Shown: positions 7,864 to 42,347 of the stretch, piece after piece
Layout: each line of letters starts with the position of its first letter
Position numbering within the stretch: the stretch's first letter is position 1
Virus record (IMG/VR): IMGVR_UViG_3300028392_000029
Location: 124,001-188,000 of that record
DNA: 64,000 bases
Direction: 5' to 3' (one strand)
Notes under the pieces: generated by a model
The model's database searches: none
Told to the model about the DNA's origin: nothing
What the model saw: only the letters and a program-made list of their open reading frames with translations
Position numbers and translations under genes: made by a program

Positions 7864-7865
7864 CA

Positions 7866-8732
7866 ATGTCACAGCAACTTATTAATTTAGGATCAGCACC
7901 TAACGATCATTCGGGCGATTCATTGCGTACCGGTGCCCAAAAAATAAATGCTAATTTTACTGAATTGTATACTAGTACAGTAATTCCCTCGCAAGTTGGA
8001 AGTGCTGGCTTGTTTTTAAGTACCAACGGTACAAATTTATCTTGGCAAGCCCCTACAATCAATAATGTAGTGTTAACAACTAATTCTTATGCAGATCCCA
8101 CATGGATTACCAGTCTAAGTTACGCTAAAATAAATGGAGCTCCCGCACAATATACATTGCCAACCGCTAGTACAAGTGTATTAGGTGGCGTTAAAGTTGA
8201 CGGTATATCGGTGGTAATTAGTGGTGCAGGAGTTATCAGTTCTCCAGCACAGGTTATTCCTACTGCAAGTGCTAGTACATTAGGCGCAGTAAAGATTGAC
8301 GGCGTTACGGTTACCTTAAACGGTAGCAGCCAGTTAGTTGCCGCACAAACAACTATAGTAAGAACTACTGTGTCTGGAACAACACAAACAATTGCCGCAG
8401 GCTCCTTTGACATTATTACTATTACTGGTTTTAAAAGTTATGCATTGCTATCTATAACAACCAGCGCGGCAGCCTGGGTATCAGTATATACCTCCACAGC
8501 AACGCAGGCAGCAGATGCAAGCAGATCAATAACAACAGATCCAGTTCCGGGCAACGGAATCGTAGCTGAGATGATTTCAACTACTGCAAAAACACAAAAA
8601 TTTACCCCAATGGTTATGGGATTTAATGACGAAGTGGTTCCAAATAACAACATACAATTGAAAGTATACAATAATGGTGTTGCATCTGCCGCTATAACAG
8701 TAACTCTTGCTCTAATCCAGCTAGAACGTTGA
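7866..8732 (+). CDS. T4 gp9/gp10-like baseplate/fibre protein
   Basis: N-terminus MSQQLINLGSAPNDHSGDSLRTGAQKINANFTELY matches the gp9/gp10 N-terminal motif; two LPTASxSxLGxVKxDG fibre repeats. Confidence 0.75.
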   Translation: MSQQLINLGSAPNDHSGDSLRTGAQKINANFTELYTSTVIPSQVGSAGLFLSTNGTNLSWQAPTINNVVLTTNSYADPTWITSLSYAKINGAPAQYTLPTASTSVLGGVKVDGISVVISGAGVISSPAQVIPTASASTLGAVKIDGVTVTLNGSSQLVAAQTTIVRTTVSGTTQTIAAGSFDIITITGFKSYALLSITTSAAAWVSVYTSTATQAADASRSITTDPVPGNGIVAEMISTTAKTQKFTPMVMGFNDEVVPNNNIQLKVYNNGVASAAITVTLALIQLER

Positions 8733-8789: not shown

Positions 8790-9398
8790 ATGCAGAGTAA
8801 AGACGTAACTGGAATACATATAGAAGGGCATATTAAGATATATAACCCTGAATCCAAAGAAATTTATGTTAACAAACGTAATGCAATCCATTACGAAAAC
8901 ATTAGTATTGCTCTAGCACAAAGCATGGCTAACAGCGGACAAGGGTTTGTCTATCAAATGGCGTTTGGCAATGGCGGTACAGCTATCGATCCTACAGGAA
9001 TTATCACGTATCTAAGCCCAAATAGTTCAGGATCAAACGCTAGTTTATACAATCAAACTTATTCTAAAATAGTTGACGGGCGTTCAAGCAATAATATTGA
9101 TCCAACCCGCAATTATATTGAAACTCGACATGTGACCGGTACAAATTATACTGATATATTTGTAACTTGTTTATTAGATTACGGCGAACCTGGTTCACAG
9201 AGTGCGTATGATACAACGTCTGATGGCGCTAATGCATTTTTATTTGATGAGTTAGGATTACAAAGTTATAGCCCAACTGGTCAAAGTTTATTGTTAACAC
9301 ATGTTATTTTCCATCCTGTACAAAAAAGTTTAAACAGATTGATTCAGATCGATTATACTGTGCGTATACAAAGTTTGACTGGCCTGGTAGGAGTTTAA
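8790..9398 (+). CDS. Virion structural protein (baseplate/tail)
   Basis: 202 aa ORF in the tail cluster, preceded by an ATAAATA motif. Confidence 0.5.
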   Translation: MQSKDVTGIHIEGHIKIYNPESKEIYVNKRNAIHYENISIALAQSMANSGQGFVYQMAFGNGGTAIDPTGIITYLSPNSSGSNASLYNQTYSKIVDGRSSNNIDPTRNYIETRHVTGTNYTDIFVTCLLDYGEPGSQSAYDTTSDGANAFLFDELGLQSYSPTGQSLLLTHVIFHPVQKSLNRLIQIDYTVRIQSLTGLVGV

Positions 9399-9401
9399 TA
9401 A

Positions 9402-11504
9402 ATGACGTATCAAGTAACCTACTCTGAGCCGAACAATCCTGCTAAAGCTCCAATTGTTGTAGCCGATCAAACCCTCAACACTCAAACTAGTATTACGTTT
9501 GTTGGTAAAAATTATGCAGGATACGGCCCAGTAATTGCAACAGACTTATTGCATCTATTAGAAAATTTTGCTAATAGTTCGCCACCCTCAAACCCAGTTC
9601 AAGGCCAGTTGTGGTATGATACCGCAGGCAGCATTAATACACTTAAAGTCTATGATGGTACTACTTGGGGCGCCGCTGGTTCGTTAAAAAAATCAGCGAC
9701 AGCTCCCGATGTTGCCAACAGCAGTCCTGGTGATTTGTGGTCTAACACAGATACAAGCCAATTATATCTATTTTCTGGATCAAACTGGTTATTAGTTGGC
9801 CCTCAATTCTCAACAGGAACTTTAACCGGTCCGATTGTTGATGAAATTATCGATGTGAACAATGAAACTTATTCGGTAATTTCTTTATATGCTAACAATT
9901 ATAGAATTGCTATAATCAGTAAAGATACATTTATACCTAAAGCATATATCGCAGGTTTTGCTAATATTAATCAGGGTATTAATTTAAGTACTACTGATAC
10001 AACAAGTTCTACATCTTTGTCAAGAATTTGGGGTACAGCAAGTTCTGCAGATGCATTACTAGTTAATAATACTGTAGTTCCGTCTTCTAGCTTCTTACGT
10101 AATGACCAAGTTAGCTTAACGAGTAACGCTATTAATATCAAGACTGACGCCGGTATCAGTCTAGGTAATAGTTTAAATTTTAATATTGGAGTTAACGGCA
10201 ATTCAACGGTATTTTATTCTAAGGGTAGTTCAAATAGTATCGAGTTTAATTTAAATAGTTCAATTTTAATTCATGTATCGCCTCTTGGAAAAATAGGAAT
10301 TGGTTTAAACAACATATCTCCAGCTTCTACACTTGATGTAGATGGCACTATAACAACCAGTGCCGGTTTAAATGATTTAGGAACTTCGGATATTAGCGAT
10401 ATAGCCGGCGCAAGCATAAAAACTTTAGGCGGACTGTCGGTATCTAAATCAACAAGTCTAGGTGATGATACTACAATAAGCGGCCAACTATATCTAAATT
10501 GGTTGCATGAAGGTCAGCCAGTAACTGGCCCAGCCCTACTTCCTTCAACAACTGGCATATATGATATTGGTTCAGCTAGTGCAACATTTAGAAATATCTA
10601 TGCACAATCGTTTGTTGGTAACTTTAATGGTGTGTTTACTGGACAGCTTACTGGGAGTATTAGCGGCGCCGCTGCCAAATTACAAAGCCCAACAAATTTT
10701 AGATTAACCGGTGACGTTTCTGCACCGGATGTGAGCTTTGATGGACAAACTCAGACTGGAGTTGCACTGTTTAATACATCTATTAGTCCTGGTATTATCA
10801 CATCTAAGGCTGCCGCCGATGATTCATCACTAACCGATCAATTTTTAGTTTATAGAGCTGGATCTGGTTTGTTAAGCATGACTAAACAAACTTTATTAAA
10901 TCACGTTGCTACTGTTCCTGTGGGCACATTATTTCCGTTTGCAGGTACAACCATACCCGACGGGTACTTGCTATGCGATGGCAGTGAGGTAAGGGTTTCA
11001 GAATATACCTTATTATTCCAAGTTATTGGGTATGTGTACAAACCTGCACAGCTATTGCAAGGTCTAGGAACATTTGGATTACCTGATATGAGAGGCAGAT
11101 TTGCATTGGGTCGTGACAACATGGATAATGGTATTACTGTACCTAGTAAAGATGGATCCGGAACACAAATTCAAACTGGCGGCGGATCAGCTAACAGAGT
11201 AACAGACATTACAGCAGACACGATTGGTACAGGCTTAGGAAGTCAAACTCAAACACTAGCATTAAACAATCTTCCGGATCACTTTCATAATTTAAGTAGT
11301 GGAAATGCCCAATATTATGCAGCCGGACTACCGGGCGCAGGCCCCGATCCAAATGCAGTTCCGGGACTAGGCTTGCCAACTACTAGTTCTGGGTCAGGAT
11401 ACCCCAGCAGTGGATCAGTTATAGCAAACTCATTGGGTGAAGGATTTTCAACAATGAACCCTTATGCAACAATTAATTACATAATCTTTACTGGTGCTTT
11501 ATAA
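9402..11504 (+). CDS. Tail fibre with tail-collar domain
   Basis: Collar motif VPVGTLFPFAG...GYLLCDGSEV...FGLPDMRGRF; N-terminal GKNYAGYG...LLENFAN...GQLWYD module; C-terminal NPYATINYII. Confidence 0.8.
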   Translation: MTYQVTYSEPNNPAKAPIVVADQTLNTQTSITFVGKNYAGYGPVIATDLLHLLENFANSSPPSNPVQGQLWYDTAGSINTLKVYDGTTWGAAGSLKKSATAPDVANSSPGDLWSNTDTSQLYLFSGSNWLLVGPQFSTGTLTGPIVDEIIDVNNETYSVISLYANNYRIAIISKDTFIPKAYIAGFANINQGINLSTTDTTSSTSLSRIWGTASSADALLVNNTVVPSSSFLRNDQVSLTSNAINIKTDAGISLGNSLNFNIGVNGNSTVFYSKGSSNSIEFNLNSSILIHVSPLGKIGIGLNNISPASTLDVDGTITTSAGLNDLGTSDISDIAGASIKTLGGLSVSKSTSLGDDTTISGQLYLNWLHEGQPVTGPALLPSTTGIYDIGSASATFRNIYAQSFVGNFNGVFTGQLTGSISGAAAKLQSPTNFRLTGDVSAPDVSFDGQTQTGVALFNTSISPGIITSKAAADDSSLTDQFLVYRAGSGLLSMTKQTLLNHVATVPVGTLFPFAGTTIPDGYLLCDGSEVRVSEYTLLFQVIGYVYKPAQLLQGLGTFGLPDMRGRFALGRDNMDNGITVPSKDGSGTQIQTGGGSANRVTDITADTIGTGLGSQTQTLALNNLPDHFHNLSSGNAQYYAAGLPGAGPDPNAVPGLGLPTTSSGSGYPSSGSVIANSLGEGFSTMNPYATINYIIFTGAL

Positions 11505-13318
11505 TGAGTTACAATATATTAAAAACCAACGGCACAACATTAACTCAATTGATTGATGGTACGATTGACCAAACAACGACTGACTTAACTTTAATAGCAA
11601 AAAATGCTACAGGTTACGGAGTTTTTTTTAATGATAACTTTGTACATCTACTAGAAAATTTTGCTAATACTAGCCAACCAAACTATCCTATAACCGGACA
11701 ACTTTGGTTTGATACTAATGATAATCGATTAAAAATATACGACGGAGTACAGTTTAAAGTCACCGGCGGAACAACAGTATCTCCGACAGCTCCCAGTAGT
11801 CTAACAACCGGGGATATCTGGATAGATAGTTTACGCCAGCAACTGTATTTTAATGACGGTAACTCGACAAAATTAGCAGGCCCTATATACACTAATGCTC
11901 AGGGACAAACAGGATTTATTGTTGAAGATATAGTAGACACTAATAAAGTTAGCCATACAATCTGTTATCTCAAAGTTGCTAGTACGATACTTGGTATTTT
12001 TAGTAAAGACAGTTTTACACCACTTACAGCAATTACTGGATTTTCCGGAGCAATTACTTCTGGATTTAATGTCGGCAACAAGCCTGGAATATCGTTTAAT
12101 GTTCCAGTAAGTTCTTCAAGTGCATTAATCAGCCCAACTGGCACACTATTATCATCGTCAAATTTTGTAACAACAGTTGGTGATTCTTCAACCGTAGGCT
12201 CATTGACAATACAAAATAGTACGCCGTTGGTATTAGGACAAGCATCTAGTACTGAAATAAATGTTAACTACTCGTTATTTGAAATTAAATCAAATTCTAC
12301 AAATCAGAATTTTTCGCTTAACATGCTAAATTCAACGAGCCAAACTTCGGCATTATATGTTAATGCGTCTGGCAAGTATGTTGGTATATATACAACGGTC
12401 CCAACAGCAACTTTAGATGTAAATGGTAGTGTTAGAGTTCGTGGAGATTTAACGATTGAAGGCACCACTACTACTATTAATTCTGCAATAATTAATGTTA
12501 GTGATAAAACTATTATTCTAGCTAAGACAGCAAGCCCGTCAAATACTAGTGCTAACGGCGGCGGCTTAGAAATTGCTGCCGGTACAGATGTTAATAAAAC
12601 ATTTCTTTGGTATTCAGCTAATACTGCGTGGACAAGTTCAGAAAATCTAAGCCTAGCTTCGGGTAAAAGTTACAAAATTAACGGTATAGATGTTGTAACA
12701 GCAAATTCACTAGGCACAGCAATTACCAGTGCGCCTGGACTAACTAGTATTGGAACTCAAATATCATTCCAAGCTGGGTATATATCTCTCACTGGGTCAA
12801 CAATTTCATATCTAAATGCATCGGTTGCAAATGCTAATTTAACTTTGACACCAAAAGGAACTGGATCAGTTGACGTAAGTAATTCTAAAATAACCAGTGT
12901 TGCAACTCCTACAGTTAGCACTGATGCCGCATCTAAAGGATATGTCGATACTGCAATACAAAGTTCTCCGCTTGCAATATCGTTGACCACTACTGGTTTT
13001 ACAAATTTACAAATATCATCAGGTATTTTACCAAAGATTTTTCCAGCCAGTGAGCATCAAAATAACACAATAGCTAGAGTAGTATGTATAGATGCGGGTG
13101 CTACACAAAGTATCCCCGCAGGATCATTTGTGACCGGCGCAATATATACTGTTGCGGCACCGGGAACTACAAATTTTACAGCAATTGGAGCAGGAAATAA
13201 TACTAGCGGAACAGTATTTGTGGCATCAGGCCCGGGAGCCGGAAGCGGAACAGCAAACCCGTATGTCCGACAATTTCAGCTATCAGCTGGAATATGGACT
13301 TACCAGTCATATTCTTAA
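11504..13318 (+). CDS. Tail fibre-like protein (paralog)
   Basis: Same N-terminal module (AKNATGYG...LLENFAN...GQLWFD); Ser/Thr-rich beta repeats; DAASKGYVD fibre motif. Confidence 0.7.
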   Translation: MSYNILKTNGTTLTQLIDGTIDQTTTDLTLIAKNATGYGVFFNDNFVHLLENFANTSQPNYPITGQLWFDTNDNRLKIYDGVQFKVTGGTTVSPTAPSSLTTGDIWIDSLRQQLYFNDGNSTKLAGPIYTNAQGQTGFIVEDIVDTNKVSHTICYLKVASTILGIFSKDSFTPLTAITGFSGAITSGFNVGNKPGISFNVPVSSSSALISPTGTLLSSSNFVTTVGDSSTVGSLTIQNSTPLVLGQASSTEINVNYSLFEIKSNSTNQNFSLNMLNSTSQTSALYVNASGKYVGIYTTVPTATLDVNGSVRVRGDLTIEGTTTTINSAIINVSDKTIILAKTASPSNTSANGGGLEIAAGTDVNKTFLWYSANTAWTSSENLSLASGKSYKINGIDVVTANSLGTAITSAPGLTSIGTQISFQAGYISLTGSTISYLNASVANANLTLTPKGTGSVDVSNSKITSVATPTVSTDAASKGYVDTAIQSSPLAISLTTTGFTNLQISSGILPKIFPASEHQNNTIARVVCIDAGATQSIPAGSFVTGAIYTVAAPGTTNFTAIGAGNNTSGTVFVASGPGAGSGTANPYVRQFQLSAGIWTYQSYS

Positions 13319-13330
13319 ACCAAAACTAGC

Positions 13331-13337
13331 ATAAATA
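13331..13337 (+). promoter_or_regulatory. T4-late-like promoter motif
   Basis: Intergenic ATAAATA before a tail fibre gene. Confidence 0.55.
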
Positions 13338-13359
13338 CTACGAATAAGGAACGAGCCAG

Positions 13360-14838
13360 ATGTCATATACAATAACAAGATATAACGGTAATCAAATTGC
13401 TGTTATTGCCGACGGCACAATAGATGCTACTCTTGATCTGAAATTAATCGGCAAAAATTATGCTGGATACGGATCAATTCAGAATGAAAATTTTGTATAT
13501 CTATTAGAAAATTTTGCTAATACTACACAGCCTCCTAAGCCATTACCAGGACAAATTTGGTTTGACAGCGGAAAAAGCAAGTTAAAATTTTACGACGGCA
13601 CAAAATTCCGTACAACAGGTGGTGCAGAAATTGGCGGAACTGCTCCTTCAGGATTAACACAGGGTGATTTTTGGTACGATACTAATAATAATCAGTTATA
13701 TGCGTGGAACGGCACTACATTTACATTGATTGGTCCTCAAGGTGTTGCAGGCGCAGGTACAACACAAATGCGCTCTATCAGTCTAAAAGACAGTTTCGGT
13801 GTGTCTCATCCAGTAATCCAGGGTGTTGATAACGGCCAGGTTATATTTACAATTAGTGCAGATAGTGATTTTATTTTAGATAACACTCAAAACGCAATCA
13901 CAGGCTTTACTACAATTCACCAAGGTATTACATTAGTTTATACTAACAATAATGCGGCTCCGGGTGTAACATCAAGTGCTCACAGATTTTACGGAACAGC
14001 TACAAATGCTGACCAATTAGGCGGATTGCCAGTATCAGCATTTGTACAAACAGGTAGCGCGGCATTTAGTACACAGGTTAACTTTGCCGATGTAGGATAT
14101 ACCGTTGGTAATCCTATTGCTAGGTTAGTTGTTTTTAACCAGTCAGCAACAACTCCTACTATTAGAAATCAATCAAACAACACAATTGTATTTCAAACTA
14201 CCGTTTCAGCGGCAACAAAAACTCCACTTCAATTAGTAGGCAGTGACATGTTACCGGGTACAACACTGACAAACAATATAGGAAGTCCGTCTTTACAGTG
14301 GAATCAAATTTATGCTAGTTATATTAACGGCACATCATCTCAAGCAGATGCGCTTAATGTAGGTGGAGTTTATAGAACAGCTAGTATTGCTTCAAGCCCT
14401 AATACTGTTGTAGCTCGTGACGGCAGCTCAAATATTGCCGCAAACTTATTTCAAGGAATTGCATCTAGTGCTAACTACGCTGACTTGGCAGAGAAATATT
14501 TAACCGATGTTGAATTAACACCGGGTACAGTGGTAAAAGTTGGTGGCTCAGCTGAAGTATCAACAGCCACTCTTGGTGATCGAGCAATAGGTGTGATATC
14601 TACAAATCCAGCTTACATGATGAATAGTGAATTAGAAGGTGGCACATATGTTGCACTAAAAGGTCGAGTACCTTGCAAGGTAGTTGGGCCTGTCGCCAAA
14701 GGCGATCGATTAATAGCATACGGACAAGGGCGTGCAGTTACCTCGATACAGGCGAACGGGGATGTATTTGCAATAGCTCTTGAGGACTTTGATACTGTAA
14801 GGGGTGTTGAAGGTGTAATTGAAGTTGTAGTACTATAA
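13360..14838 (+). CDS. Tail fibre with C-terminal intramolecular chaperone (peptidase G2-like)
   Basis: Same N-terminal module; C-terminal YADLAEKY...GVISTNPAYMMN...VALKGRVPCKV signature. Confidence 0.75.
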   Translation: MSYTITRYNGNQIAVIADGTIDATLDLKLIGKNYAGYGSIQNENFVYLLENFANTTQPPKPLPGQIWFDSGKSKLKFYDGTKFRTTGGAEIGGTAPSGLTQGDFWYDTNNNQLYAWNGTTFTLIGPQGVAGAGTTQMRSISLKDSFGVSHPVIQGVDNGQVIFTISADSDFILDNTQNAITGFTTIHQGITLVYTNNNAAPGVTSSAHRFYGTATNADQLGGLPVSAFVQTGSAAFSTQVNFADVGYTVGNPIARLVVFNQSATTPTIRNQSNNTIVFQTTVSAATKTPLQLVGSDMLPGTTLTNNIGSPSLQWNQIYASYINGTSSQADALNVGGVYRTASIASSPNTVVARDGSSNIAANLFQGIASSANYADLAEKYLTDVELTPGTVVKVGGSAEVSTATLGDRAIGVISTNPAYMMNSELEGGTYVALKGRVPCKVVGPVAKGDRLIAYGQGRAVTSIQANGDVFAIALEDFDTVRGVEGVIEVVVL

Positions 14839-14847
14839 GGAATAACA

Positions 14848-15750
14848 ATGTCTGGTCAAAATACATCAATCCTAGCCACTGATTATAATACTATACAGTC
14901 AAAAATTGCTACGGTTCTAGGAGTTGGTTCCGGCACTAGCGGATACGGTCAACCAGTCACTAGTATCCAAGTAACACAAGGTACTCCGATCCTAGTAAGT
15001 CAGTGGACTGCATTGCGAAATGATTTGCTAAAGGCACGTAATCATCAAACAACAACAGACCAAAGCGGACAACTTACTGTTATTACAAATACTACCCAGG
15101 TAAAAGAGTCAGACAGAGCCGCTTACGATTCAATGGCTGAGCTAATTATTGTAAACAAGCTGATAACTCCACCGAGCGGGCAAGGCACATTAGCTGATGT
15201 TGCTACCAGCAGTAGAACTAGTGCATGGAACGGTACTATTAGTCATGTAGTAACTGCAACCTTTCCTAATTATGATTCCGCAAGGGCATTTTTTAACAGC
15301 GGCGGCAATTTTCAATTCTCCGGTAGCCAAAGCGGCGGATCAAATACTGCAATCGGCAGTAAAAATGACTCGTGGAATAAAATGCTGTCTAACATGGGTA
15401 CTATTACCTTTGACTACGGCAGTACTTCTGATGCAGGAACTACTCCGGGAACAGTGGCCAGTAGTATCGGGTACTATCAGCTGACCACAGTAAACCAATT
15501 GATTTTTACAAAAAGCACTGAGAATAGTTCATACTCTCCAAATCAGTACGATATTTCTGCTAAAATAAATGCGGCAGGATCAGTGATAACTTTTACCATA
15601 CATTTTGCAGACCTATCCGGACAACCAAATGCACCGTATGGTACCGACGAAAACGTTGACGGAACTTTGATCAGCCAAGTCCAGGCATACTATGCTACTG
15701 GAACCAATGTAGCAGTTTCTTTACCTGCTGTATCGTCAGTTGGTCCTTAA
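14848..15750 (+). CDS. Virion structural protein
   Basis: 300 aa Ser/Thr/Gly-rich ORF at the end of the tail cluster. Confidence 0.5.
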   Translation: MSGQNTSILATDYNTIQSKIATVLGVGSGTSGYGQPVTSIQVTQGTPILVSQWTALRNDLLKARNHQTTTDQSGQLTVITNTTQVKESDRAAYDSMAELIIVNKLITPPSGQGTLADVATSSRTSAWNGTISHVVTATFPNYDSARAFFNSGGNFQFSGSQSGGSNTAIGSKNDSWNKMLSNMGTITFDYGSTSDAGTTPGTVASSIGYYQLTTVNQLIFTKSTENSSYSPNQYDISAKINAAGSVITFTIHFADLSGQPNAPYGTDENVDGTLISQVQAYYATGTNVAVSLPAVSSVGP

Positions 15751-15820
15751 TCAGGACTGCACTCCACGCTTCACTCAACATGATAACTAACATAGTGTAC
15801 AATACACTATGGAGTCGTCT

Positions 15821-16171
15821 ATGGATGAAAGAATCGAAAAAGCATTTAACGTTGCTAATTATATGGCAACTCTGTCTAATCAGCGCAAGGTCGCATTAGA
15901 AGAATTTAATCAAAAATTATTGTTTTACATAAATGGTGCAACATTTTTAATTACACTAGAGTTAATTAATTTTACAAAAATGTCACTAGATCTCGGACGT
16001 AATAGTGATGTTCCGTTTTTGGACATAAACAATTTACCTGTTAATATCGTTGATGTTACAGAATTTTTTACAACTATCACTGATCAGTATTTTGAAGCGT
16101 TAAACGAGTATTCAGTTAAGTTTAACGAAATTAAATCTAAAAGAAAAATTTCGGATATCGTTGAACTATGA
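15821..16171 (+). CDS. Hypothetical protein
   Basis: Start moved to the ATG downstream of GGAG (15811-15814); ATGA overlap with the next gene. Confidence 0.6.
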   Translation: MDERIEKAFNVANYMATLSNQRKVALEEFNQKLLFYINGATFLITLELINFTKMSLDLGRNSDVPFLDINNLPVNIVDVTEFFTTITDQYFEALNEYSVKFNEIKSKRKISDIVEL

Positions 16172-17013
16172 AAGGTGCAGTAATATTTGCTCAAAATAAT
16201 AGCAAAATTGATTACATCAAAATGGCAGTATATTCTGCTTCTAAAGTTATTGAACATTTAGATATTCCGGTATCAGTTGTAACTGACGACAAAAACTTTT
16301 TGCTATCTAAATATCCGGATAATCCTTTTGATCAAATTATTGAAATTCCTAAAGATAGTTCGACCCAGGTAAAAAAATTCAGCGACGGAGCACTAGCATC
16401 GACTATGCTAGAATGGAAAAATTCCTCAAGAGGACAAATTTATAATTTATCTCCGTATGAAAAAACTCTAGTAATCGACAGCGATTATATTATAAATTCT
16501 AGCATACTAAAACCTGCTCTTGACAACGATCAAGATTTACAATTATATAAAAGTTCCTTCGACTTAGCTGGATGGAAACGTTCAAATGAATTTGATAGAA
16601 TAACACAATACAGTATTCCTTTTTACTGGGCTACGGTATTTGTATTTCAAAAAAACGTATTTACAGAAGCATTCTTTAATATTGTTGCGTATATAAAATC
16701 AAATTGGCATTACTATAGAATGTTGTACAATATTGAATCTAATAATTTTAGAAATGATTTTGCATTTAGTATTGCAATCCATATTATGAATGGAAGCACA
16801 AATGGTACATTTGCAACTAATCTTCCGGGAACAATGGTATACACTTTGGATAAAGATGTGCTAGTTAGCACTGATGCAAATAAGATGAAATTTTTAGTTG
16901 AAAAGAAAAATCATCTTGGAGAATATACACTTGTTAAAACTCATGGCCTTGATGTCCATGTAATGAATAAATCAAGTCTAACTAGATTTATTGATGGAGG
17001 TTCTGGTGTCTAA
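16168..17013 (+). CDS. Nucleotide-diphospho-sugar transferase-like protein (GT-A)
   Basis: KTLVIDSDY DxD motif; RNDFAFSIA and HVMNK motifs; paralog of the next gene. Confidence 0.55.
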   Translation: MKGAVIFAQNNSKIDYIKMAVYSASKVIEHLDIPVSVVTDDKNFLLSKYPDNPFDQIIEIPKDSSTQVKKFSDGALASTMLEWKNSSRGQIYNLSPYEKTLVIDSDYIINSSILKPALDNDQDLQLYKSSFDLAGWKRSNEFDRITQYSIPFYWATVFVFQKNVFTEAFFNIVAYIKSNWHYYRMLYNIESNNFRNDFAFSIAIHIMNGSTNGTFATNLPGTMVYTLDKDVLVSTDANKMKFLVEKKNHLGEYTLVKTHGLDVHVMNKSSLTRFIDGGSGV

Positions 17014-17845
17014 GGGATTTTTAGTACTAGCTCAAAATACTGATACTGTTGACTATGTACAACAGGCTTACGCATTGGCCCTATCAATTAAGTATAGTCA
17101 AACAGATATAACGGCAATATCAATTGCAACCAACGATCCAGTTCCTAAAAAATATCAAAAAGTATTTGATCAAATAATCCCAATACCTTGGGTAGATGAT
17201 ACTGCTACTAGATTTCGAAGTGAAAACCGTTGGAAACTGTTTCATATAAGTCCCTATGAAGAAACAATTGTATTAGATACTGACATGCTACTATTAGGCG
17301 ATATTAAATCCTGGTGGGATTTTTGCAGTAATTTTGACTTACAGTTTTGTTCACAAATAACTAATTACAAACTAGATACAGTAGTTGATACTTATCACAG
17401 GAAAGCGTTCATTGCCAATGGATTGCCTAGTCCATATTTTGCGTTACATTATTTTAAAAAAACAGAACTAGCATTAAATTTTTATAAAACATTAGAATTT
17501 GTAGTGAATAATTGGGAACTATGCTATGGCAAATTTGCTCCTAAGGAATACCAAAATTGGTTAAGCATGGATCTAGCTTCAGCAATTGCCATTGATATGC
17601 TTGGCATATCTGAACAAGTAATTAATAATAAAAACCCAATGGAGTTTGCACATATGAAAACACCAATACAGGGAATAATACCTATACCTAAAAGTTGGCA
17701 GGACGTTGTTACATGTTATTTAAATAATAACGGTGAGCTAATTGTTGGAAACATCAAACAAAATAAATTGTTTCATTATGTAGAAAAAGACTTTATTGAT
17801 AATCGCATGTTATCTAAATTATCGGGATTAGTGTATGGTTCGTAA
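17006..17845 (+). CDS. Nucleotide-diphospho-sugar transferase-like protein (GT-A)
   Basis: ETIVLDTDM DxD motif; probable GTG start after GGAGG. Confidence 0.55.
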   Translation: MSKGFLVLAQNTDTVDYVQQAYALALSIKYSQTDITAISIATNDPVPKKYQKVFDQIIPIPWVDDTATRFRSENRWKLFHISPYEETIVLDTDMLLLGDIKSWWDFCSNFDLQFCSQITNYKLDTVVDTYHRKAFIANGLPSPYFALHYFKKTELALNFYKTLEFVVNNWELCYGKFAPKEYQNWLSMDLASAIAIDMLGISEQVINNKNPMEFAHMKTPIQGIIPIPKSWQDVVTCYLNNNGELIVGNIKQNKLFHYVEKDFIDNRMLSKLSGLVYGS

Positions 17846-18410
17846 GTACAAAGCTCCTGTGCCTAAATTTTACTTGCATTATGATAAATCTACCGGCAGG
17901 ATTTTTTCAGCGTCAAACGAAAAACAAAATGAGAATTTCCTTGAAGTACCTCAAGCCGAATATAACGATTTTATAACAGGTAAGAAAAAGTTTTTTGACT
18001 ATATTATTGGCAATATAAAAGTTCCAGGCAAGCGAGCTTACACTGGATTAATACCAAAAGCTGATCATACTGTTGTATCTAGAAACAGTGTATTAGAATG
18101 GATTATAGATGCTCCTAATAAATCAACTGATTTAACAGTAACATGGGATAAAAATCGTTGGGGATTTAGTTTATCGGACAAGTGTAAAAAATCTATAGGA
18201 ACTGATCCGATTGCTAATTTAGTTTTTTTTGTTATGTTAGAAAACAATTTTAATTTTTTAATTAGAACTATTGTATTAGATTCTAAACAATTATTAGAAC
18301 AGCCTATAGTAAATATTGCATTTGACACTAAATTTGAAAATGATATAAAACTGATTACGATTGCATCAAAGGCAGTCTTTGATTCGTATGGATTATTAAT
18401 TAATGATTAA
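17835..18410 (+). CDS. Hypothetical protein
   Basis: 191 aa ORF overlapping both neighbours. Confidence 0.6.
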   Translation: MVRKYKAPVPKFYLHYDKSTGRIFSASNEKQNENFLEVPQAEYNDFITGKKKFFDYIIGNIKVPGKRAYTGLIPKADHTVVSRNSVLEWIIDAPNKSTDLTVTWDKNRWGFSLSDKCKKSIGTDPIANLVFFVMLENNFNFLIRTIVLDSKQLLEQPIVNIAFDTKFENDIKLITIASKAVFDSYGLLIND

Positions 18411-19293
18411 AATTATAGAACAAGATATTATTTTTCTCAGCTATGATGAACCTAATGCTGAAAAAAACTATGCCGATTTGTTGACCAAAGCACCTTGGGC
18501 AAAGCGTGTACACGGAGTAAAAGGCAGTGATGCCGCACACAAAGCCTGCGCCGCGTTGAGTGAGACTGAATACTTTGTTACTGTAGATGCAGATAATATA
18601 ATAGATCCTAAGTTTTTAGAAGTTGAAATTGATTTAGAAAAGTTAGGATTAACTAATAAAAATGTGTTTAGCTGGTGCGGGCGAGTTCATGTTAACGGAC
18701 TTATGTACGGCAATGGCGGGCTTAAATTATGGACACGTGAGTTTGTCAATAATATGCGCACACACGAAAATAGTGATCCTACTGATGTCAAGGGATTAGT
18801 TGAATTCTGCTTTGATGACTTGTATGTACAATTTAATGAAAACTACAGCGAGAGTTTTACTAATGCCACTCCGTTCCAGGCATGGAGAGCAGGATTCAGA
18901 GAAGGTGTAAAAATGTGCTTATTGCAGGGTGCAAAAGCTAACCATTTAAAAGACATCTGGTGGCAAAATTATCACAGATTATTAATTTGGTGTAATGTAG
19001 GCGCTGATGTAAAAAATGGGCTGTGGAGTATGTACGGTGCTAGAGAAGGATGCTATCGTACCATGTGTACTGATTGGGATTATGCTAATGTTAGAGATTT
19101 CGAGTGGCTCACATCTGAGTGGGAAACTACGTACAGTAAAATTACCGACAAAATGTTGCCTTATGAAATAATGGGAATTGGCGAAACTTTAAAACATGAA
19201 TACAATTTAGAAATGTCTGATTTAGATAGCGACAGCAGTAAATTTTTTAAATTAGTTTACAGCAACATCCCAAGGAACTTAAGGCGACTATAA
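18403..19293 (+). CDS. Glycosyltransferase family 2-like protein
   Basis: IIFLSYDEPNA start, FVTVDADN DxD motif, GNGGLKLW. Confidence 0.6.
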   Translation: MIKIIEQDIIFLSYDEPNAEKNYADLLTKAPWAKRVHGVKGSDAAHKACAALSETEYFVTVDADNIIDPKFLEVEIDLEKLGLTNKNVFSWCGRVHVNGLMYGNGGLKLWTREFVNNMRTHENSDPTDVKGLVEFCFDDLYVQFNENYSESFTNATPFQAWRAGFREGVKMCLLQGAKANHLKDIWWQNYHRLLIWCNVGADVKNGLWSMYGAREGCYRTMCTDWDYANVRDFEWLTSEWETTYSKITDKMLPYEIMGIGETLKHEYNLEMSDLDSDSSKFFKLVYSNIPRNLRRL

Positions 19294-19985
19294 TGTACGA
19301 TATTATTTTTATTTCATACAATGAACCAGATGCAGATGCCAACTTTAATGCACTAAAAGAACGATTTCCTTTAGTCAAGCGTGTTAATGGTATTAAGGGT
19401 ATACATCAAGCTCATATTGCCGCTGCCAAAAAAAGTTTTACTAAAATGATGTGGGTAGTAGATGCAGATGCAGTTGTATTGAATTCTTTTAAATTTGATT
19501 ATCTAGTACCAGAGTGGGAAACAGATGTAGTACATGTTTGGCATAGTATTAATCCTATCAACAGTTTATCATATGGATATGGTGGGATAAAGCTATTGCC
19601 GAGATCGTTAACAGCAAGAATGAATGTTAACAATCCAGATATGACTATGAGTATAAGTAAGAAATTTAAAGTAATGAAAGAAGTTAGCAATATTACTGCA
19701 TTCAATACTGACGAGTTTACCACTTGGCGATCGGCATTTCGCGAGTGCGCAAAATTAGCATCTATTAAGGATTCTGAAGCTACTGAACGTTTAGACACAT
19801 GGTGTAATGTTAGTAATGGACATTACGGAATCTATGCAATTGCAGGTGCAGTTGCAGGTAGAAAATACGGTGAAAAAAATGCTGGCAATATACCAGCATT
19901 AAGTAAAATCAATGACTTTAAATGGCTAGCTGATCAATTCAAGAGTCATAGGGAAAATATCAGCAATAACCTTAGCACAGGCTAA
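19293..19985 (+). CDS. Glycosyltransferase family 2-like protein (paralog)
   Basis: IIFISYNEPDA start, WVVDADA DxD motif, GYGGIKLL, WRSAFRE. Confidence 0.6.
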   Translation: MYDIIFISYNEPDADANFNALKERFPLVKRVNGIKGIHQAHIAAAKKSFTKMMWVVDADAVVLNSFKFDYLVPEWETDVVHVWHSINPINSLSYGYGGIKLLPRSLTARMNVNNPDMTMSISKKFKVMKEVSNITAFNTDEFTTWRSAFRECAKLASIKDSEATERLDTWCNVSNGHYGIYAIAGAVAGRKYGEKNAGNIPALSKINDFKWLADQFKSHRENISNNLSTG

Positions 19986-20591
19986 TGCTACTTCTTGATG
20001 CTCTTTTTGTGTACCATTAGCACTGCGTAGTTCAATAAAATGAATCCAACTGCGTAGTGTACCATTCATATAAATTCTGCTTTCTATAAGACCTTCTGGC
20101 AATACTGCTCGAGCTTGTTCTTTGGCAATGCCACGCTCTATTGCTTCTTGGTAGATCAAACGGCTATGTTCAATGATGAACTTTTGCTTGGCATCCCACC
20201 ATGCTTGTAACTCTGTATCGCTTGTGGAAATACTGTTCTGTCTATTTTTTGTATCTTGGAGTCGTGCTTCTCGCAGTACAAACGACAGGTCTCGAGTAGG
20301 ATCAGCATATCGCTGACTGAATTCTTGAAAGCTGAAGCTACGATGTCTGAGGATCTGTCGTGCAATATCTCTTGTTGTGGAGATTTCAATACAGGCTGAG
20401 ACCATTTCGAGTGGTGACCAGTGCTGGTGTTTGATGAGGTATCGGATGAGTTTTTCGGATGTTTCTGTATTGAGTTGATTGGAGGGATTAGACACACGGG
20501 CGCAATACGCAATGAGTTCCTGCGCATCTGTGAGGCCCAAATCTCTAAATTCCGGTGTAGGTTGGGAGTAACTGAGTAGTTGAACATGCAT
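19926..20591 (-). CDS. thyX: Flavin-dependent thymidylate synthase
   Basis: RHRSFSFQEFSQRY ThyX motif; HWSPLE; QARAVLP. Confidence 0.95.
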   Translation of the reverse strand: MHVQLLSYSQPTPEFRDLGLTDAQELIAYCARVSNPSNQLNTETSEKLIRYLIKHQHWSPLEMVSACIEISTTRDIARQILRHRSFSFQEFSQRYADPTRDLSFVLREARLQDTKNRQNSISTSDTELQAWWDAKQKFIIEHSRLIYQEAIERGIAKEQARAVLPEGLIESRIYMNGTLRSWIHFIELRSANGTQKEHQEVALACAKVIADIFPMTLELIS

Positions 20592-20594
20592 TAT

Positions 20595-20915
20595 TTATAA
20601 CTTCTTTTTTTTAAGGAATTTTTGAGTACTACGTTCAATATCTCTTCTAACTTTAACGGTATCTAGTTTAAAATCGACGTTATCTACTTTATCTTCATAA
20701 TTAACAACTAGTTCAGATAAATTCTTTTCAAAAGCAGGCCACCCATCACGTTTAATTTCTGGGGTGATTCTTATCTCCCAAGTCTTACCATCTTTAAAAT
20801 TGACCAGAACGGCATGGAGATACCTAAGAGGTAACACATTAAGTTTTACCTCACTGAATACTTCTGGCCAATTTTCTATAAGATCTTTAGAAAGTGATTT
20901 ACCTAAGTTAGACAA
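20595..20915 (-). CDS. Hypothetical protein
   Basis: 106 aa ORF tiled within the operon. Confidence 0.6.
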   Translation of the reverse strand: MSNLGKSLSKDLIENWPEVFSEVKLNVLPLRYLHAVLVNFKDGKTWEIRITPEIKRDGWPAFEKNLSELVVNYEDKVDNVDFKLDTVKVRRDIERSTQKFLKKKKL

Positions 20916-41572: not shown

Positions 41573-42346
41573 TTATTTTCTTATTTTGTTGTTGTATTTC
41601 ACCACTTCTTCTACAACGGTTACAGGGGTATTTAGGTTTTTTGCATAATGTATGAAAGCATTTGTGTCTTTAGGAAAACACGCTCCGCCAAACCCAAACA
41701 ATCCATCGGATCCAGGCACGTTCATATGGCTTAATCCAATTCTAGTATCTGCAGAGACTAACTGTTTGACTAATTCATAGTCTGCACCGTTGGCCTGACA
41801 TACTTCATAAATTTGATTAAAAAACGCTACCTTTGTACTTAAAAAACTATTAATTGAATATTTGATCATACTAGCTTCCGTAATACTACACGGGAGAAAG
41901 AATTCGCATTTTTTAAGAACAGATGAAAATAAGTTTTCCCAGAAACTATTGAAATCTTCTCCGCCGATAATCATATATTCTTGATTTAAGAAATCTTCAT
42001 CAGCAGTTGCCGCACGTAGAAATTCTGGACTATAACAAATATGATGATTAGGATAATCGACTAATATTTGAGATAGCTGATCCGGGGGTATAGTTGACTT
42101 AATTAAAACTGGTAAATTATCCGGCGTATTTTCTAATACTGATCGTATCTGTGTGTCGTCACAACTACCGTTGGGCAAACTTGGTGTACCTACACATATG
42201 ATAACACCTTCTCCTGTTTTGTAATCAGATACACTACTAGTGTTGATCTTTGGATCAACAATGTGAATAGTATGCTCAGCCGCCAATGCTAGACCAACCG
42301 CCTTACCTACAAATCCATAACCTGCAATTATAATTTCTTTTTTCAT
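41573..42346 (-). CDS. ugd: UDP-glucose/GDP-mannose dehydrogenase family protein (short form)
   Basis: GYGFVG, ICVGTP, KSTIPP, SPEFLR, KYSIN, GFGGACFPKD; stops after the central domain. Confidence 0.85.
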   Translation of the reverse strand: MKKEIIIAGYGFVGKAVGLALAAEHTIHIVDPKINTSSVSDYKTGEGVIICVGTPSLPNGSCDDTQIRSVLENTPDNLPVLIKSTIPPDQLSQILVDYPNHHICYSPEFLRAATADEDFLNQEYMIIGGEDFNSFWENLFSSVLKKCEFFLPCSITEASMIKYSINSFLSTKVAFFNQIYEVCQANGADYELVKQLVSADTRIGLSHMNVPGSDGLFGFGGACFPKDTNAFIHYAKNLNTPVTVVEEVVKYNNKIRK

Positions 42347-42347
42347 A

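What the first reader, a model, noticed from the sequence alone, without database searches (positions are those of the whole stretch)
15821..19985. Six-gene cassette with two pairs of paralogous GT-A glycosyltransferases directly behind the tail-fibre genes
Seen: four DxD-motif ORFs forming two paralog pairs (16168/17006 and 18403/19293) plus two unknown ORFs. All six overlap their neighbours and are co-oriented with the virion genes, ending the + strand block. Inference: a virion (fibre/baseplate) glycosylation machine, or alternatively host-surface remodelling. The upstream fibres are very Ser/Thr-rich, so they offer potential O-glycosylation sites. Virion glycosylation is documented in only a few phage groups.
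Basis: partly seen in the sequence, partly recalled or inferred. Interest (0 to 1): 0.7.

Follow-up and report, generated by a model that had tools for sequence, protein, structure and literature searches.

The report
Jumbo-phage glycosyltransferase operon behind tail fibres
A freshwater jumbo phage carries, right behind its tail-fibre genes, a conserved six-gene operon with its own promoter that encodes four sugar-transferring enzymes from two unannotated families; it almost certainly builds a glycan, but whether the glycan goes onto the virion, the host surface or something else is still open.

Summary
Six overlapping + strand ORFs (15809/15821-19985) follow the tail-fibre genes. Both paralog pairs are real (O2/O3 E 9e-12; O5/O6 E 6e-26), and the DxD aspartates are invariant or nearly so across relatives.

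No Pfam, NCBIfam or PHROG glycosyltransferase model matches. High-confidence AlphaFold models do show GT-A folds. O2/O3 are GT8-like (glycogenin, LgtC, GlyE). O5/O6 are divergent GT2-like enzymes with an unmatched helical C-terminal half.

The order fibres-O1-O2-O3-O4-O5-(island)-O6 is kept in 80 IMG/VR loci and in Ralstonia phage RsoM2USA. In 24 of 65 loci, a 0.9-8.8 kb island of N-twitch radical SAM, UDP-sugar dehydrogenase, DegT aminotransferase and epimerase genes sits between O5 and O6. This phage keeps homologs of several island genes elsewhere in its genome.

New here: the cassette is not simply the tail of the fibre operon. A hairpin and a near-consensus sigma-70 promoter precede O1 in 41 of 59 relatives. 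That promoter is the class this phage uses before its early-looking genes.

The glycan-building function is well supported; the acceptor is not. My estimates are virion protein about 0.4, host envelope about 0.28, DNA about 0.08.

The parts
9402..15750 (+). Context: four tail-fibre-like genes. They are f700 (9402-11504), f604 (11504-13318), f492 (13360-14838) and f300 (14848-15750). The first three share an N-terminal domain of about 90 aa.
   Evidence: PHROG tail fibre, collar fibre and virion structural hits. The N-termini of f700, f604 and f492 and the body of f300 match RsoM2USA ORF355. S+T is 18-27%.
15751..15825 (+). Intergenic control region. It holds a sigma-70-like site, TCAACA-17-TACAAT (15775-15803, 9/12 matches), and a 9-bp perfect inverted repeat (15791-15799 / 15803-15811) that covers the -10 element and the first ATG.
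   Evidence: Scan, inverted repeat, RNA fold -17.2 kcal/mol with z -4.3. In 41 of 59 related loci the same gap holds an 11-12/12 match to TTGACA-N16-18-TATAAT, against 0.6% of random 90-mers.
15809..16171 (+). O1: a small acidic protein (116-120 aa, pI 4.6) of no known family. It is translationally coupled to O2 and may be an accessory subunit of O2.
   Evidence: Conserved in 64 loci and in RsoM2USA ORF354. No family or PDB match. The predicted O1-O2 complex has weak support: ipSAE 0.52 against a best control of 0.00.
16168..17013 (+). O2: a GT8-like GT-A glycosyltransferase, paralog of O3. DxD = D104/D106; His264 and Lys268 are invariant.
   Evidence: Paralogy. Invariant residues. The family profile hits glycogenin. 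Ortholog RsoM2USA ORF353.
17006..17845 (+). O3: a GT8-like GT-A glycosyltransferase. DxD = D91/D93; His257 is invariant and Lys261 is conserved.
   Evidence: AlphaFold2 pLDDT 95.2. Foldseek PDB hits glycogenin, LgtC, GlyE and LARGE1, E 1e-7, TM about 0.5. Swiss-Prot fold hits are all GT8. Profile against PDB: glycogenin E 5e-7 with the DxD aligned.
17835..18410 (+). O4: a fast-evolving protein (191 aa, pI 9.0) of unknown family with no invariant residue apart from the start Met, so probably not an enzyme. An ORF occupies this position in most relatives.
   Evidence: The O3-O5 gap is 400-700 nt in 68 of 72 loci. Mean column identity is 25%. No family or PDB match; the Atlas gives only weak beta-sandwich leads.
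18322..18349 (+). Internal sigma-70-like site, TTGACA-16-TATAAA (11/12), inside the O4 3' end and 54 nt before the O5 start. It may be a second promoter in this phage, whose O1 promoter is degenerate.
   Evidence: It is not conserved in relatives and may be chance.
18403..19293 (+). O5: a divergent GT2-like GT-A glycosyltransferase (residues 1-155) with an unmatched helical C-terminal half (about 157-285). It is the most conserved gene of the cassette and is acidic (pI 5.3).
   Evidence: AlphaFold2 pLDDT 91.5. VIA-align Z about 10 to B4GALNT1, STIV A197, WrtF, ppGalNAcT and SpsA. Foldseek hits PBCV-1 A64R and TarP. AFDB GT2 proteins align at TM about 0.5. D62 and D64 are invariant. More than 8000 90%-identity clusters exist in metagenomes.
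19293..19985 (+). O6: the shorter paralog of O5 (230 aa, pI 8.9), with DxD kept. In relatives it is separated from O5 by a variable sugar-tailoring island.
   Evidence: Paralogy. Weak Pfam Glyphos_transf match, E 1e-4, below cut-off. Ortholog RsoM2USA ORF348. Island survey.
19926..20591 (-). Context, not part of the cassette: a canonical ThyX gene, convergent with O6. Its terminator-like hairpin (19878-19900) lies inside the O6 3' end.
   Evidence: Pfam Thy1 E 1e-44. Hairpin. RsoM2USA keeps the cassette but has no ThyX.
41573..42415 (-). Possible scattered partner: an ORF similar to the UDP-glucose/GDP-mannose dehydrogenases that lie inside the O5-O6 island of relatives.
   Evidence: tblastn of the Pfam-confirmed island dehydrogenases onto the own genome at 165630-166316: 25-29% identity, E about 1e-13. 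Not confirmed by a family model here.

Best explanation
The region is a self-contained glycan-assembly operon. It has its own sigma-70-type promoter, set off from the last fibre gene by a hairpin.

The operon makes six soluble cytoplasmic proteins. Two are GT8-like glycosyltransferases, a family that is typically retaining (O2, O3). Two are GT2-like glycosyltransferases, a family that is typically inverting (O5, O6). O1 is a small acidic protein that probably docks on O2. O4 is a fast-evolving non-catalytic protein.

Each transferase keeps its metal-binding DxD. I infer that the four enzymes add sugars one after another from nucleotide sugars to build a short hetero-oligosaccharide. In relatives, an island between O5 and O6 supplies and tailors unusual sugars: N-twitch radical SAM enzymes, UDP-sugar dehydrogenase, DegT aminotransferase, epimerase and B12-radical SAM. 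This phage keeps homologs of several of these genes elsewhere, next to a 2OG-Fe(II) oxygenase and a carbamoyltransferase.

The acceptor I think most likely is one or more of the phage's own virion proteins (fibre or baseplate), glycosylated in the cytoplasm before assembly.

Shown: the folds, the motifs, the synteny, the promoter and hairpin, and the island content. Inferred: sequential action, retaining or inverting chemistry, early timing, and above all the acceptor.
For: GT-A folds with conserved DxD are shown for both families.

Order and linkage to the fibre genes are kept across 80 loci and RsoM2USA at 25-50% protein identity. An independent lineage has a giant Peptidase_S74 fibre gene followed by an Anp1-like GT and then a 1789-aa protein with an O6-like domain.

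Nucleotide-sugar and tailoring genes lie inside the cassette in relatives. The own genome holds homologs of them.

The O5-like domain is fused to a GT-B domain in some proteins. It lies beside Pfam GT2 or GT1/GT4 genes in bacterial chromosomes.

The four GTs are conserved across phages of very different hosts, and O5 is more conserved than the fibres. That argues for a conserved acceptor, possibly phage-made.

The atlas clusters of both families are almost wholly viral. No TM segment is present in any of the six proteins.

XacN1 virions contain at least two glycoproteins, and its GT genes also sit in the baseplate module.

The O1-O2 complex has weak support: ipSAE 0.52 against a best control of 0.00. 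That mark was reached by 58 of 80 solved complexes and 2 of 110 mismatches. At a score of 0.60 or under, however, only 7 of the 80 solved complexes and both passing mismatches fall, so a pass this low is more often wrong than right unless the guess was likely beforehand. The three runs agree in at least 97% of contacts, and the partner's pLDDT is at least 83.
Against: No glycan has been seen on any virion of this lineage.

The cassette has its own early-class promoter and is insulated from the fibre operon. Adjacency therefore does not mean co-expression.

GT8, GT2 and GT9-like enzymes, UDP-sugar dehydrogenase and DegT are the usual content of LPS and O-antigen loci.

The fold hits to viral capsid GTs are shared by DNA-modifying phage GTs.

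The fibres are only modestly Ser/Thr-rich.

XacN1 lacks this particular cassette.

The metatranscriptome evidence is a handful of read-length pieces.
Confidence: 0.4

Rival explanations
1. Host-envelope remodelling. The operon is expressed early from a host-type promoter. Its peripheral cytoplasmic transferases alter the LPS core, O-antigen or another surface glycan of the infected cell. This would mask the receptor that the neighbouring fibres recognise, giving superinfection exclusion or keeping progeny from sticking to debris. The receptor-masking genes would then travel with the receptor-binding genes as one module.
For: An early-class sigma-70 promoter and insulation from the late fibre genes. 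GT8 (LgtC/WaaJ type), GT2 and a GT9-like heptosyltransferase hit elsewhere in the genome, plus UDP-sugar dehydrogenase, DegT and epimerase, are typical LPS and O-antigen gene content. A low-GC, hypervariable island resembles O-antigen loci. Cellular homologs of O5 sit in chromosomal GT clusters. From established knowledge, T5 llp and the cor genes of T1/phi80-type phages are early receptor-masking genes placed beside the receptor-binding genes.
Against: No membrane protein, flippase, polymerase or ligase is in the cassette, and none of the six proteins has a TM segment. The four GTs are conserved between phages of a Ralstonia host and of unknown lake hosts, whereas host surface glycans vary. 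The atlas clusters of both GT families are almost wholly viral. Radical SAM and 2OG-oxygenase partners are unusual for LPS loci.
Confidence: 0.28
2. DNA hypermodification. The transferases glycosylate a hydroxylated pyrimidine in phage DNA to evade restriction, as T-even phages, RB69 and the 5mYOX-associated phage GT-A enzymes do.
For: The early-type promoter fits. The cassette abuts nucleotide-metabolism genes (ThyX). DNA-modifying phage GT-A enzymes give the same PDB top hits, TarP and PBCV-1 A64R. RsoM2USA has a second, divergent ThyA homolog. Only about 60% of this genome is held.
Against: No ThyA homolog, TET/JBP dioxygenase or C5-methyltransferase is found in the held 223 kb, although the TET/JBP model rang in none of the control genomes either. 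ThyX looks canonical, and RsoM2USA keeps the cassette without it. Such pathways are usually clustered. O5 is acidic, pI 5.3. Cellular homologs lie in polysaccharide-type GT clusters with no DNA-modification genes. The R...DDD...EDY/F motif of the DNA GT-A enzymes is not among the invariant residues.
Confidence: 0.08
3. Another acceptor. The GT2-like/N-twitch radical SAM pair, which co-occurs beyond this lineage, makes a glycosylated peptide, a small molecule or a free or stored oligosaccharide that serves the infection in some other way.
For: O5-like genes lie next to radical SAM genes in unrelated contigs and in RsoM2USA. SPASM/twitch enzymes often mature peptides. Fold matches include the S-glycosyltransferases SunS and ThuS.
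Against: No precursor-peptide gene was seen. In this phage the radical SAM gene is 77 kb away. The twitch enzyme BtrN acts on a carbohydrate, so the pairing also fits sugar tailoring.
Confidence: 0.12

Closest known systems
GT8 glycosyltransferases (glycogenin, LgtC, GlyE/GlyA-F of serine-rich-repeat adhesins, LARGE, UGGT catalytic domain)
   Same: O2 and O3 share the GT-A fold, with the DxD aligned to the glycogenin DxD and a C-terminal invariant His/Lys. Profile E 5e-7, Foldseek E 1e-7, TM about 0.5.
   Different: There is no Pfam PF01501 hit at E 0.1. Only the N-terminal 105 residues align at sequence level. The family's atlas clusters are almost wholly viral. Donor, acceptor and mechanism are untested.
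GT2-type minimal GT-A enzymes, including viral ones (PBCV-1 A64R domain, STIV A197, phage TarP, SpsA)
   Same: O5 and O6 share the N-terminal Rossmann-like nucleotide-sugar domain, a beta1 motif resembling the GT2 'xxYNE' motif, and an invariant DxD.
   Different: There is no Pfam PF00535 hit. TM is only 0.3-0.5. Nucleotidyltransferases (MobA, IspD) score nearly as well over the same 155 residues. The helical C-terminal half has no counterpart.
Mycobacteriophage virion glycosylation (Freeman et al. 2023, cited in PMC12619734) and chlorovirus or mimivirus capsid and fibril glycosylation
   Same: The virus encodes several GTs, with or without sugar-tailoring genes, that could decorate structural proteins. 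The gene content varies between clades.
   Different: In those systems the glycans were demonstrated chemically; here nothing is measured. The enzymes are unrelated in sequence. Here the genes sit behind the fibre genes under a sigma-70-type promoter.
Phage DNA-glycosylating GT-A and GT-B enzymes (T4 alpha/beta-GT, RB69/DLP3 arabinosyltransferases, 5mYOX-associated GTs)
   Same: These are phage-encoded GT-A enzymes, expressed independently of virion genes, with the same PDB fold neighbours.
   Different: No base-hydroxylating partner was found in the held 223 kb. The motif set differs. Cellular homologs lie in polysaccharide-type clusters.
Xanthomonas phage XacN1 GT genes and virion glycoproteins
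   Same: XacN1 is a Rak2-like jumbo myovirus related to RsoM2USA. Its GT9 gene lies inside the baseplate module, a carbamoyltransferase plus a GT lie nearby, and glycoproteins were detected in virions.
   Different: XacN1 has no detectable ortholog of O2, O3, O5 or O6. Which XacN1 enzyme makes which glycan is unknown.

Membership tests
CAZy GT8 / Pfam PF01501 (Glyco_transf_8) | GT-A fold: a single Rossmann-like nucleotide-sugar domain | tested here: met
   O3 model pLDDT 95.2. Foldseek to glycogenin, LgtC and GlyE at E 1e-7, TM 0.45-0.56. All top Swiss-Prot fold hits are GT8.
CAZy GT8 / Pfam PF01501 (Glyco_transf_8) | DxD metal-binding motif at the end of beta4 | tested here: met
   D91 (at least 90% conserved) and D93 (invariant) of O3; D104 and D106 of O2 are invariant. 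The motif aligns to the glycogenin DxD in the HMM alignment.
CAZy GT8 / Pfam PF01501 (Glyco_transf_8) | C-terminal His metal ligand within an HxxGxxKPW-type motif | tested here: inconclusive
   His257 of O3 (invariant, with Lys261 conserved) and His264/Lys268 of O2 (both invariant) form an H-x3-K spacing. Their geometry in the model was not measured.
CAZy GT8 / Pfam PF01501 (Glyco_transf_8) | Match to the family's curated sequence model | tested here: not met
   No Pfam or NCBIfam hit at E up to 0.1-1. Only a self-built profile reaches glycogenin, over 105 residues. CAZy/dbCAN models were not available.
CAZy GT2 / Pfam PF00535 (Glycos_transf_2) | GT-A fold with an N-terminal nucleotide-binding domain and DxD | tested here: met
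   O5 model pLDDT 91.5. Z about 10 over residues 1-155. AFDB GT2 proteins align at TM 0.48-0.53. D62 and D64 are invariant.
CAZy GT2 / Pfam PF00535 (Glycos_transf_2) | Match to the curated sequence model | tested here: not met
   No PF00535 hit. Only O6 gives a sub-threshold PF04464 match (21.8 against 22.1 bits). Profile against PDB sequences: no hit at E 10.
CAZy GT2 / Pfam PF00535 (Glycos_transf_2) | Transferase rather than nucleotidyltransferase activity | not testable with these tools
   MobA, IspD and CobY nucleotidyltransferases score Z 8.5-9.2 over the same residues. The DxD, the fusions to GT-B domains and the GT-cluster contexts favour a transferase.
Phage virion-glycosylation systems (mycobacteriophage type) | Glycans covalently attached to virion proteins and dependent on the phage GTs | not testable with these tools
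   There are no virions of this lineage. RsoM2USA proteomics covered only 10 abundant bands, with no glycan stain. The XacN1 glycoproteins are in a phage without this cassette.
Phage DNA-glycosylation gene clusters | A partner enzyme that makes a hydroxylated pyrimidine (ThyA homolog, or C5-MTase plus 5mYOX/TET), usually clustered with the GT | tested here: not met
   No PF00303, PF12851 or PF00145 match in the held 223 kb. Caveats: the genome is about 60% complete, and the PF12851 search rang in no control genome.
Seroconversion cassettes (gtrABC / Oac type) | Integral-membrane flippase or transferase components | tested here: not met
   The maximum Kyte-Doolittle 19-residue mean is 1.53 or less in all six proteins. 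There are no GtrA/GtrB-type Pfam hits.

The most novel reading that the evidence does not exclude
A very abundant lineage of freshwater jumbo phages, together with soil phage RsoM2USA, decorates its tail fibres or baseplate with a clade-variable complex glycan. Two previously unrecognised GT-A families would build it. One is a new GT2-like family with a novel helical domain that works with N-twitch radical SAM sugar-tailoring enzymes. The genes form an early-promoter operon that is deliberately insulated from the late fibre transcripts.
Probability: 0.3. Interest if true: 0.75.

Novelty: new variant of a known kind. Interest (0 to 1): 0.55.

Why it matters
Phage-encoded glycosylation of virions has been shown chemically in very few phage groups. 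The purposes of the many glycosyltransferase genes in large aquatic phages are mostly guessed.

This cassette gives a concrete, conserved and very widespread test case. O5 alone has more than 8000 90%-identity clusters. The O5/O6 family has 1784 50%-identity clusters. All are annotated 'hypothetical'.

A cultured member, RsoM2USA, makes it testable at the bench. The region also defines two orphan GT-A families and a recurrent GT2-like/N-twitch radical SAM partnership whose chemistry is unknown.

If the glycan sits on the fibres, it bears on host recognition and on the stability of phages in lakes. If it sits on the host envelope, it is a new type of superinfection-exclusion module linked to receptor-binding genes.

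Tried and rejected
- **Family scans.** Pfam, NCBIfam and PHROG scans of all six proteins found no glycosyltransferase family.
- **PDB sequence searches.** Searches with O2, O5 and the O5/O6 profile found nothing. Profiles of O1 and O4 gave only chance-level hits.
- **Nucleotide searches of phage records.** No close relative was found. Only RsoM2USA appears at the protein level.
- **Relation between the two pairs.** hhalign of the two GT families shows no relation, so they are two families, not four paralogs.
- **T4-type late promoter.** TATAAATA occurs once in the window against about 9 expected, so it is not a usable marker of late genes here.
- **Generic scan.** The promoter and terminator scan showed no enrichment. 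The promoter became visible only by comparing relatives.
- **Ser/Thr richness.** The excess is modest and typical of fibre proteins, so I rejected it as evidence for O-glycosylation.
- **Metatranscriptomes.** Two lake runs hold only eight and six read-length pieces. That is too little to show co-transcription or timing.
- **Moraphage paper.** PMC12619734 lists four core GT orthogroups, but I could not establish that it describes this lineage. Its predicted hosts and phylogenetic placement differ from the Rak2-like/Atu_ph07 affinity seen here.

Full report
**Setting.** The window is bases 124001-188000 of a 223-kb IMG/VR viral contig that CheckV rates about 60% complete. The DNA comes from freshwater lake metagenomes. 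Its baseplate protein (8790-9398) is 41-51% identical to proteins of Sinorhizobium phage Phosso, Agrobacterium phage Atu_ph07 and the Rak2-like jumbo myoviruses. The only cultured phage with homologs of the cassette is the 344-kb Ralstonia phage RsoM2USA.

**The observation.** Six + strand ORFs lie at 15809-19985 and overlap each other by 1-11 nt. They follow a baseplate-wedge connector gene and four fibre-like genes. They end the + strand block, where O6 overlaps a convergent, canonical ThyX gene by 60 nt.
- O2/O3 are paralogs: 23% identity, E 9e-12.
- O5/O6 are paralogs: 28% identity, E 6e-26.
- The two pairs are unrelated to each other at profile level.
- RsoM2USA has one ortholog of each of O1, O2, O3, O5 and O6 in the same order, plus a positional counterpart of O4. 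Both duplications are therefore old.
- The DxD aspartates are invariant or nearly so in 40-sequence alignments.

The claimed Ser/Thr richness of the fibres is only a modest excess: 18-27% against a genome mean of 14.6%.

**Are they GT-A glycosyltransferases?** No curated model says so. Pfam, NCBIfam and PHROGs give no glycosyltransferase hit, and single-sequence PDB searches are empty. Structure settles the question.

*O3.* AlphaFold2 with a 40-row alignment gives pLDDT 95.2. The model matches glycogenin, LgtC, GlyE and LARGE1 (Foldseek E 1e-7, TM about 0.5). Its Swiss-Prot fold neighbours are all GT8. A profile of the O2/O3 family reaches glycogenin by sequence (E 5e-7), with the DxD aligned.

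*O5.* The model has pLDDT 91.5. Residues 1-155 match minimal GT-A enzymes at Z about 10: B4GALNT1, STIV A197, WrtF, ppGalNAc-T and SpsA. By Foldseek it matches PBCV-1 A64R and TarP. AlphaFold DB GT2 proteins align at TM about 0.5. Nucleotidyltransferases with the same fold score almost as well. I call it a transferase for three reasons:
- the invariant DxD;
- fusions of the O5-like domain to GT-B domains;
- the glycosyltransferase-cluster contexts described below.

The helical C-terminal half of O5 has no match.

O1 and O4 remain of unknown family. O4 has no invariant residue apart from the start Met, so it is probably not an enzyme. O1 is predicted to bind O2 with weak support: ipSAE 0.52, best control 0.00, at least 97% contact agreement between runs, and partner pLDDT of at least 83. 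That mark was reached by 58 of 80 solved complexes and 2 of 110 mismatched pairs, but a pass this low (0.60 or under) was shared by only 7 of the solved complexes and by both passing mismatches, so on its own it is more often wrong than right. None of the six proteins has a transmembrane segment.

**Relatives and synteny.** O5 has more than 8000 90%-identity clusters in metagenomes and O3 has 1243; all are 'hypothetical'. In 80 IMG/VR loci the order fibres, O1, O2, O3, O4-position, O5, O6, ThyX(-) is kept. O5 is the best-conserved gene of the region and O4 the worst.

Of 65 loci that hold both O5 and O6:
- 35 have them adjacent, as in the window;
- 24 carry an island of 0.9-8.8 kb between them.

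The commonest island gene is a radical SAM protein of about 457 aa. It occurs in 20 loci, sits at the same place in RsoM2USA as ORF349, and belongs to NCBIfam N_Twi_rSAM (E 4e-96). Other island genes are:
- further SPASM/twitch radical SAM enzymes;
- UDP-glucose/GDP-mannose dehydrogenases;
- a DegT aminotransferase;
- an NAD epimerase/dehydratase;
- a GDSL esterase;
- in one ENA contig, a B12-binding radical SAM enzyme.

The window's own phage has no island. It does encode a 60%-identical ortholog of the N-twitch radical SAM enzyme 77 kb away, next to a 2OG-Fe(II) oxygenase. It also has homologs of other island ORFs beside a GT9-like gene and a carbamoyltransferase, and a dehydrogenase-like ORF inside the window. 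This content marks the whole system as glycan biosynthesis with elaborate sugar tailoring.

**Beyond the lineage.** The O5/O6 family has 1784 representatives at 50% clustering, many of them multidomain. In a differently arranged phage contig (L094), the order is a 3529-aa fibre gene with a Peptidase_S74 domain, then an Anp1-like GT-A gene, then a 1789-aa protein ending in an O6-like domain. T4-like tail-completion, neck and sheath genes lie on the other side. The link to fibre genes therefore recurs where the link to ThyX does not.

Cellular homologs (34-39% identity) exist in isolate genomes of Tateyamaria, Ruegeria, Cribrihabitans, Rhodobacter and Parvibaculum, and in Bdellovibrionota chromosomes. 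In a Bacteriovoracaceae chromosome the gene lies beside three Pfam GT2 genes and a flavin oxidoreductase. In Cribrihabitans it lies directly after a GT1/GT4 gene. Neither context has DNA-modification genes.

**A separate transcription unit.** Genes O1-O6 overlap one another, but a gap of about 50-80 nt between the last fibre gene and O1 is kept in most relatives. Aligned, this gap reads as a consensus sigma-70 promoter followed by a Shine-Dalgarno sequence and the O1 start.
- In 41 of 59 loci it matches TTGACA-N16-18-TATAAT at 11-12 of 12 positions, against 0.6% of random 90-mers.
- No other + strand gene of the region shows this.
- In the window the site is weaker: TCAACA-17-TACAAT at 15775-15803. 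An 11/12 site lies inside O4, before O5.

Across the 223-kb genome, perfect sites of this type crowd the first 8.4 kb before small ORFs. They also precede minus-strand non-structural genes. The structural block has none.

The same gap folds into a strong hairpin in all six loci tested (z -3.0 to -6.8). The hairpin pairs the promoter region with the ribosome-binding region, and in two loci it ends in a U-run like an intrinsic terminator. L094 likewise shows a hairpin and then a sigma-70-like promoter between its fibre gene and its GT cluster.

I infer that the cassette is insulated from the fibre transcripts and is expressed from a host-type promoter, probably early. The timing itself is not measured. 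Two lake metatranscriptomes hold only a few read-length pieces of f300, O3, O4, O5, O6 and ThyX.

**What it most likely does.** The well-supported part is that four soluble GT-A enzymes of two families build a glycan from nucleotide sugars in the infected cell. They work with an accessory protein and, in relatives, a tailoring island.

The acceptor is inferred. I favour virion proteins (0.4) on these grounds:
- The link to fibre and baseplate genes persists across lineages.
- The four transferases are conserved across phages of very different hosts, which suggests a conserved acceptor, possibly phage-made.
- The atlas clusters of both families are almost wholly viral.
- XacN1, a distant cultured relative, has GT genes in the baseplate module and is reported to have virion glycoproteins.

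Host-envelope remodelling (0.28) explains the early-type promoter, the LPS-like gene repertoire and the placement beside receptor-binding genes. The last point has a parallel in T5 llp and in cor, which I cite from established knowledge. Against it, the cassette lacks any membrane component.

DNA glycosylation (0.08) is weakened in three ways. No ThyA-homolog, TET/JBP or C5-methyltransferase partner is present in the held 223 kb. O5 is acidic. The cellular homologs sit in polysaccharide-type contexts. It is not excluded, because the genome is incomplete and RsoM2USA has a second, divergent ThyA homolog. Fold similarity to A64R or TarP does not discriminate, since DNA-modifying phage GT-A enzymes share those hits.

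A peptide or small-molecule acceptor tied to the radical SAM partner keeps 0.12.

**Novelty.** Phage glycosyltransferase clusters are a known kind. This one is a new variant because of:
- two orphan GT-A families;
- a recurrent GT2-like/N-twitch radical SAM pairing;
- a hypervariable tailoring island;
- an insulated early-type operon fixed behind the fibre genes of a very abundant freshwater jumbo-phage lineage.

A 2025 paper notes four core glycosyltransferase orthogroups in aquatic 'moraphages', without locating or characterising them. I could not tell whether that is the same lineage.

Noticed in passing
window 15751-15825; L007, L024, L058, L067, L075 at the equivalent gap: The hairpin before O1 pairs the promoter -10 (or -35) region with the Shine-Dalgarno/start region. 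The sequence differs between loci but the pairing is kept (z -3 to -6.8). A transcript started at the cassette's own promoter would lack the 5' arm and leave the ribosome site free. Read-through from the fibre operon would hide the site or terminate there. This is reminiscent of the T4 gene e/soc arrangement.
   Followed up: partly
G000:C1:354-8397 (outside the window): Fourteen 11-12/12 TTGACA-17-TATAAT sites on the + strand lie within 8 kb, ten of them with a small ORF (72-287 aa) starting within 120 nt. This looks like a classic early-gene region and defines the promoter class that also precedes the cassette in relatives.
   Followed up: partly
G000:C1:56618-61252 and 216889-223025 (outside the window): Two further glyco-type clusters. 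The first holds a GT9-like ORF, two homologs of island ORFs and a NodU/CmcH-type carbamoyltransferase. The second holds a 2OG-Fe(II) oxygenase, the N-twitch radical SAM ortholog, a homolog of an island ORF and two unknown ORFs, with a perfect sigma-70 site before the 400-aa ORF.
   Followed up: partly
window 16000-18400: O1-O4 are markedly AT-rich (GC 0.29-0.32) against 0.385 for the window and 0.38-0.43 for the fibre genes. O5 and O6 are intermediate (0.35-0.38).
   Followed up: no
window 20592-20599 (- strand): The only TATAAATA in the 64-kb window (about 9 expected by chance) sits immediately upstream of the ThyX start codon.
   Followed up: no
window 9402-14838: The three large fibre genes share an N-terminal domain of about 90 aa, which also matches the N-terminus of RsoM2USA ORF355. 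This suggests several alternative fibres docking on one baseplate site.
   Followed up: no
L066:9364-10005: In one relative the ORF at the O4 position is unrelated to O4 and carries a GIY-YIG-like motif by eye. It may be a homing-endonuclease insertion.
   Followed up: no
L090 (RsoM2USA 7739-8398): RsoM2USA has a second, divergent ThyA homolog (E 6e-25) next to a dCMP-deaminase gene, in addition to a canonical ThyA, and has no ThyX. A pyrimidine-hydroxylating or hydroxymethylating enzyme, and hence modified DNA, cannot be excluded in that phage.
   Followed up: no
L100/L130/L150, L101-L103, L105 (genome contigs): Contigs filed under bacterial MAGs carry 47-54% identical O5 homologs, one contig with two copies. 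The MAGs include Neomarinimicrobiota RS350 (335 kb), Rickettsiales MED657 and Gammaproteobacteria MED685. These look like mis-binned jumbo-phage contigs.
   Followed up: no
L006, L007, L020, L032, L039 downstream of O5: Some relatives carry a third member of the O5/O6 family: an extra O6-like copy at 35-43% identity before the true O6.
   Followed up: no
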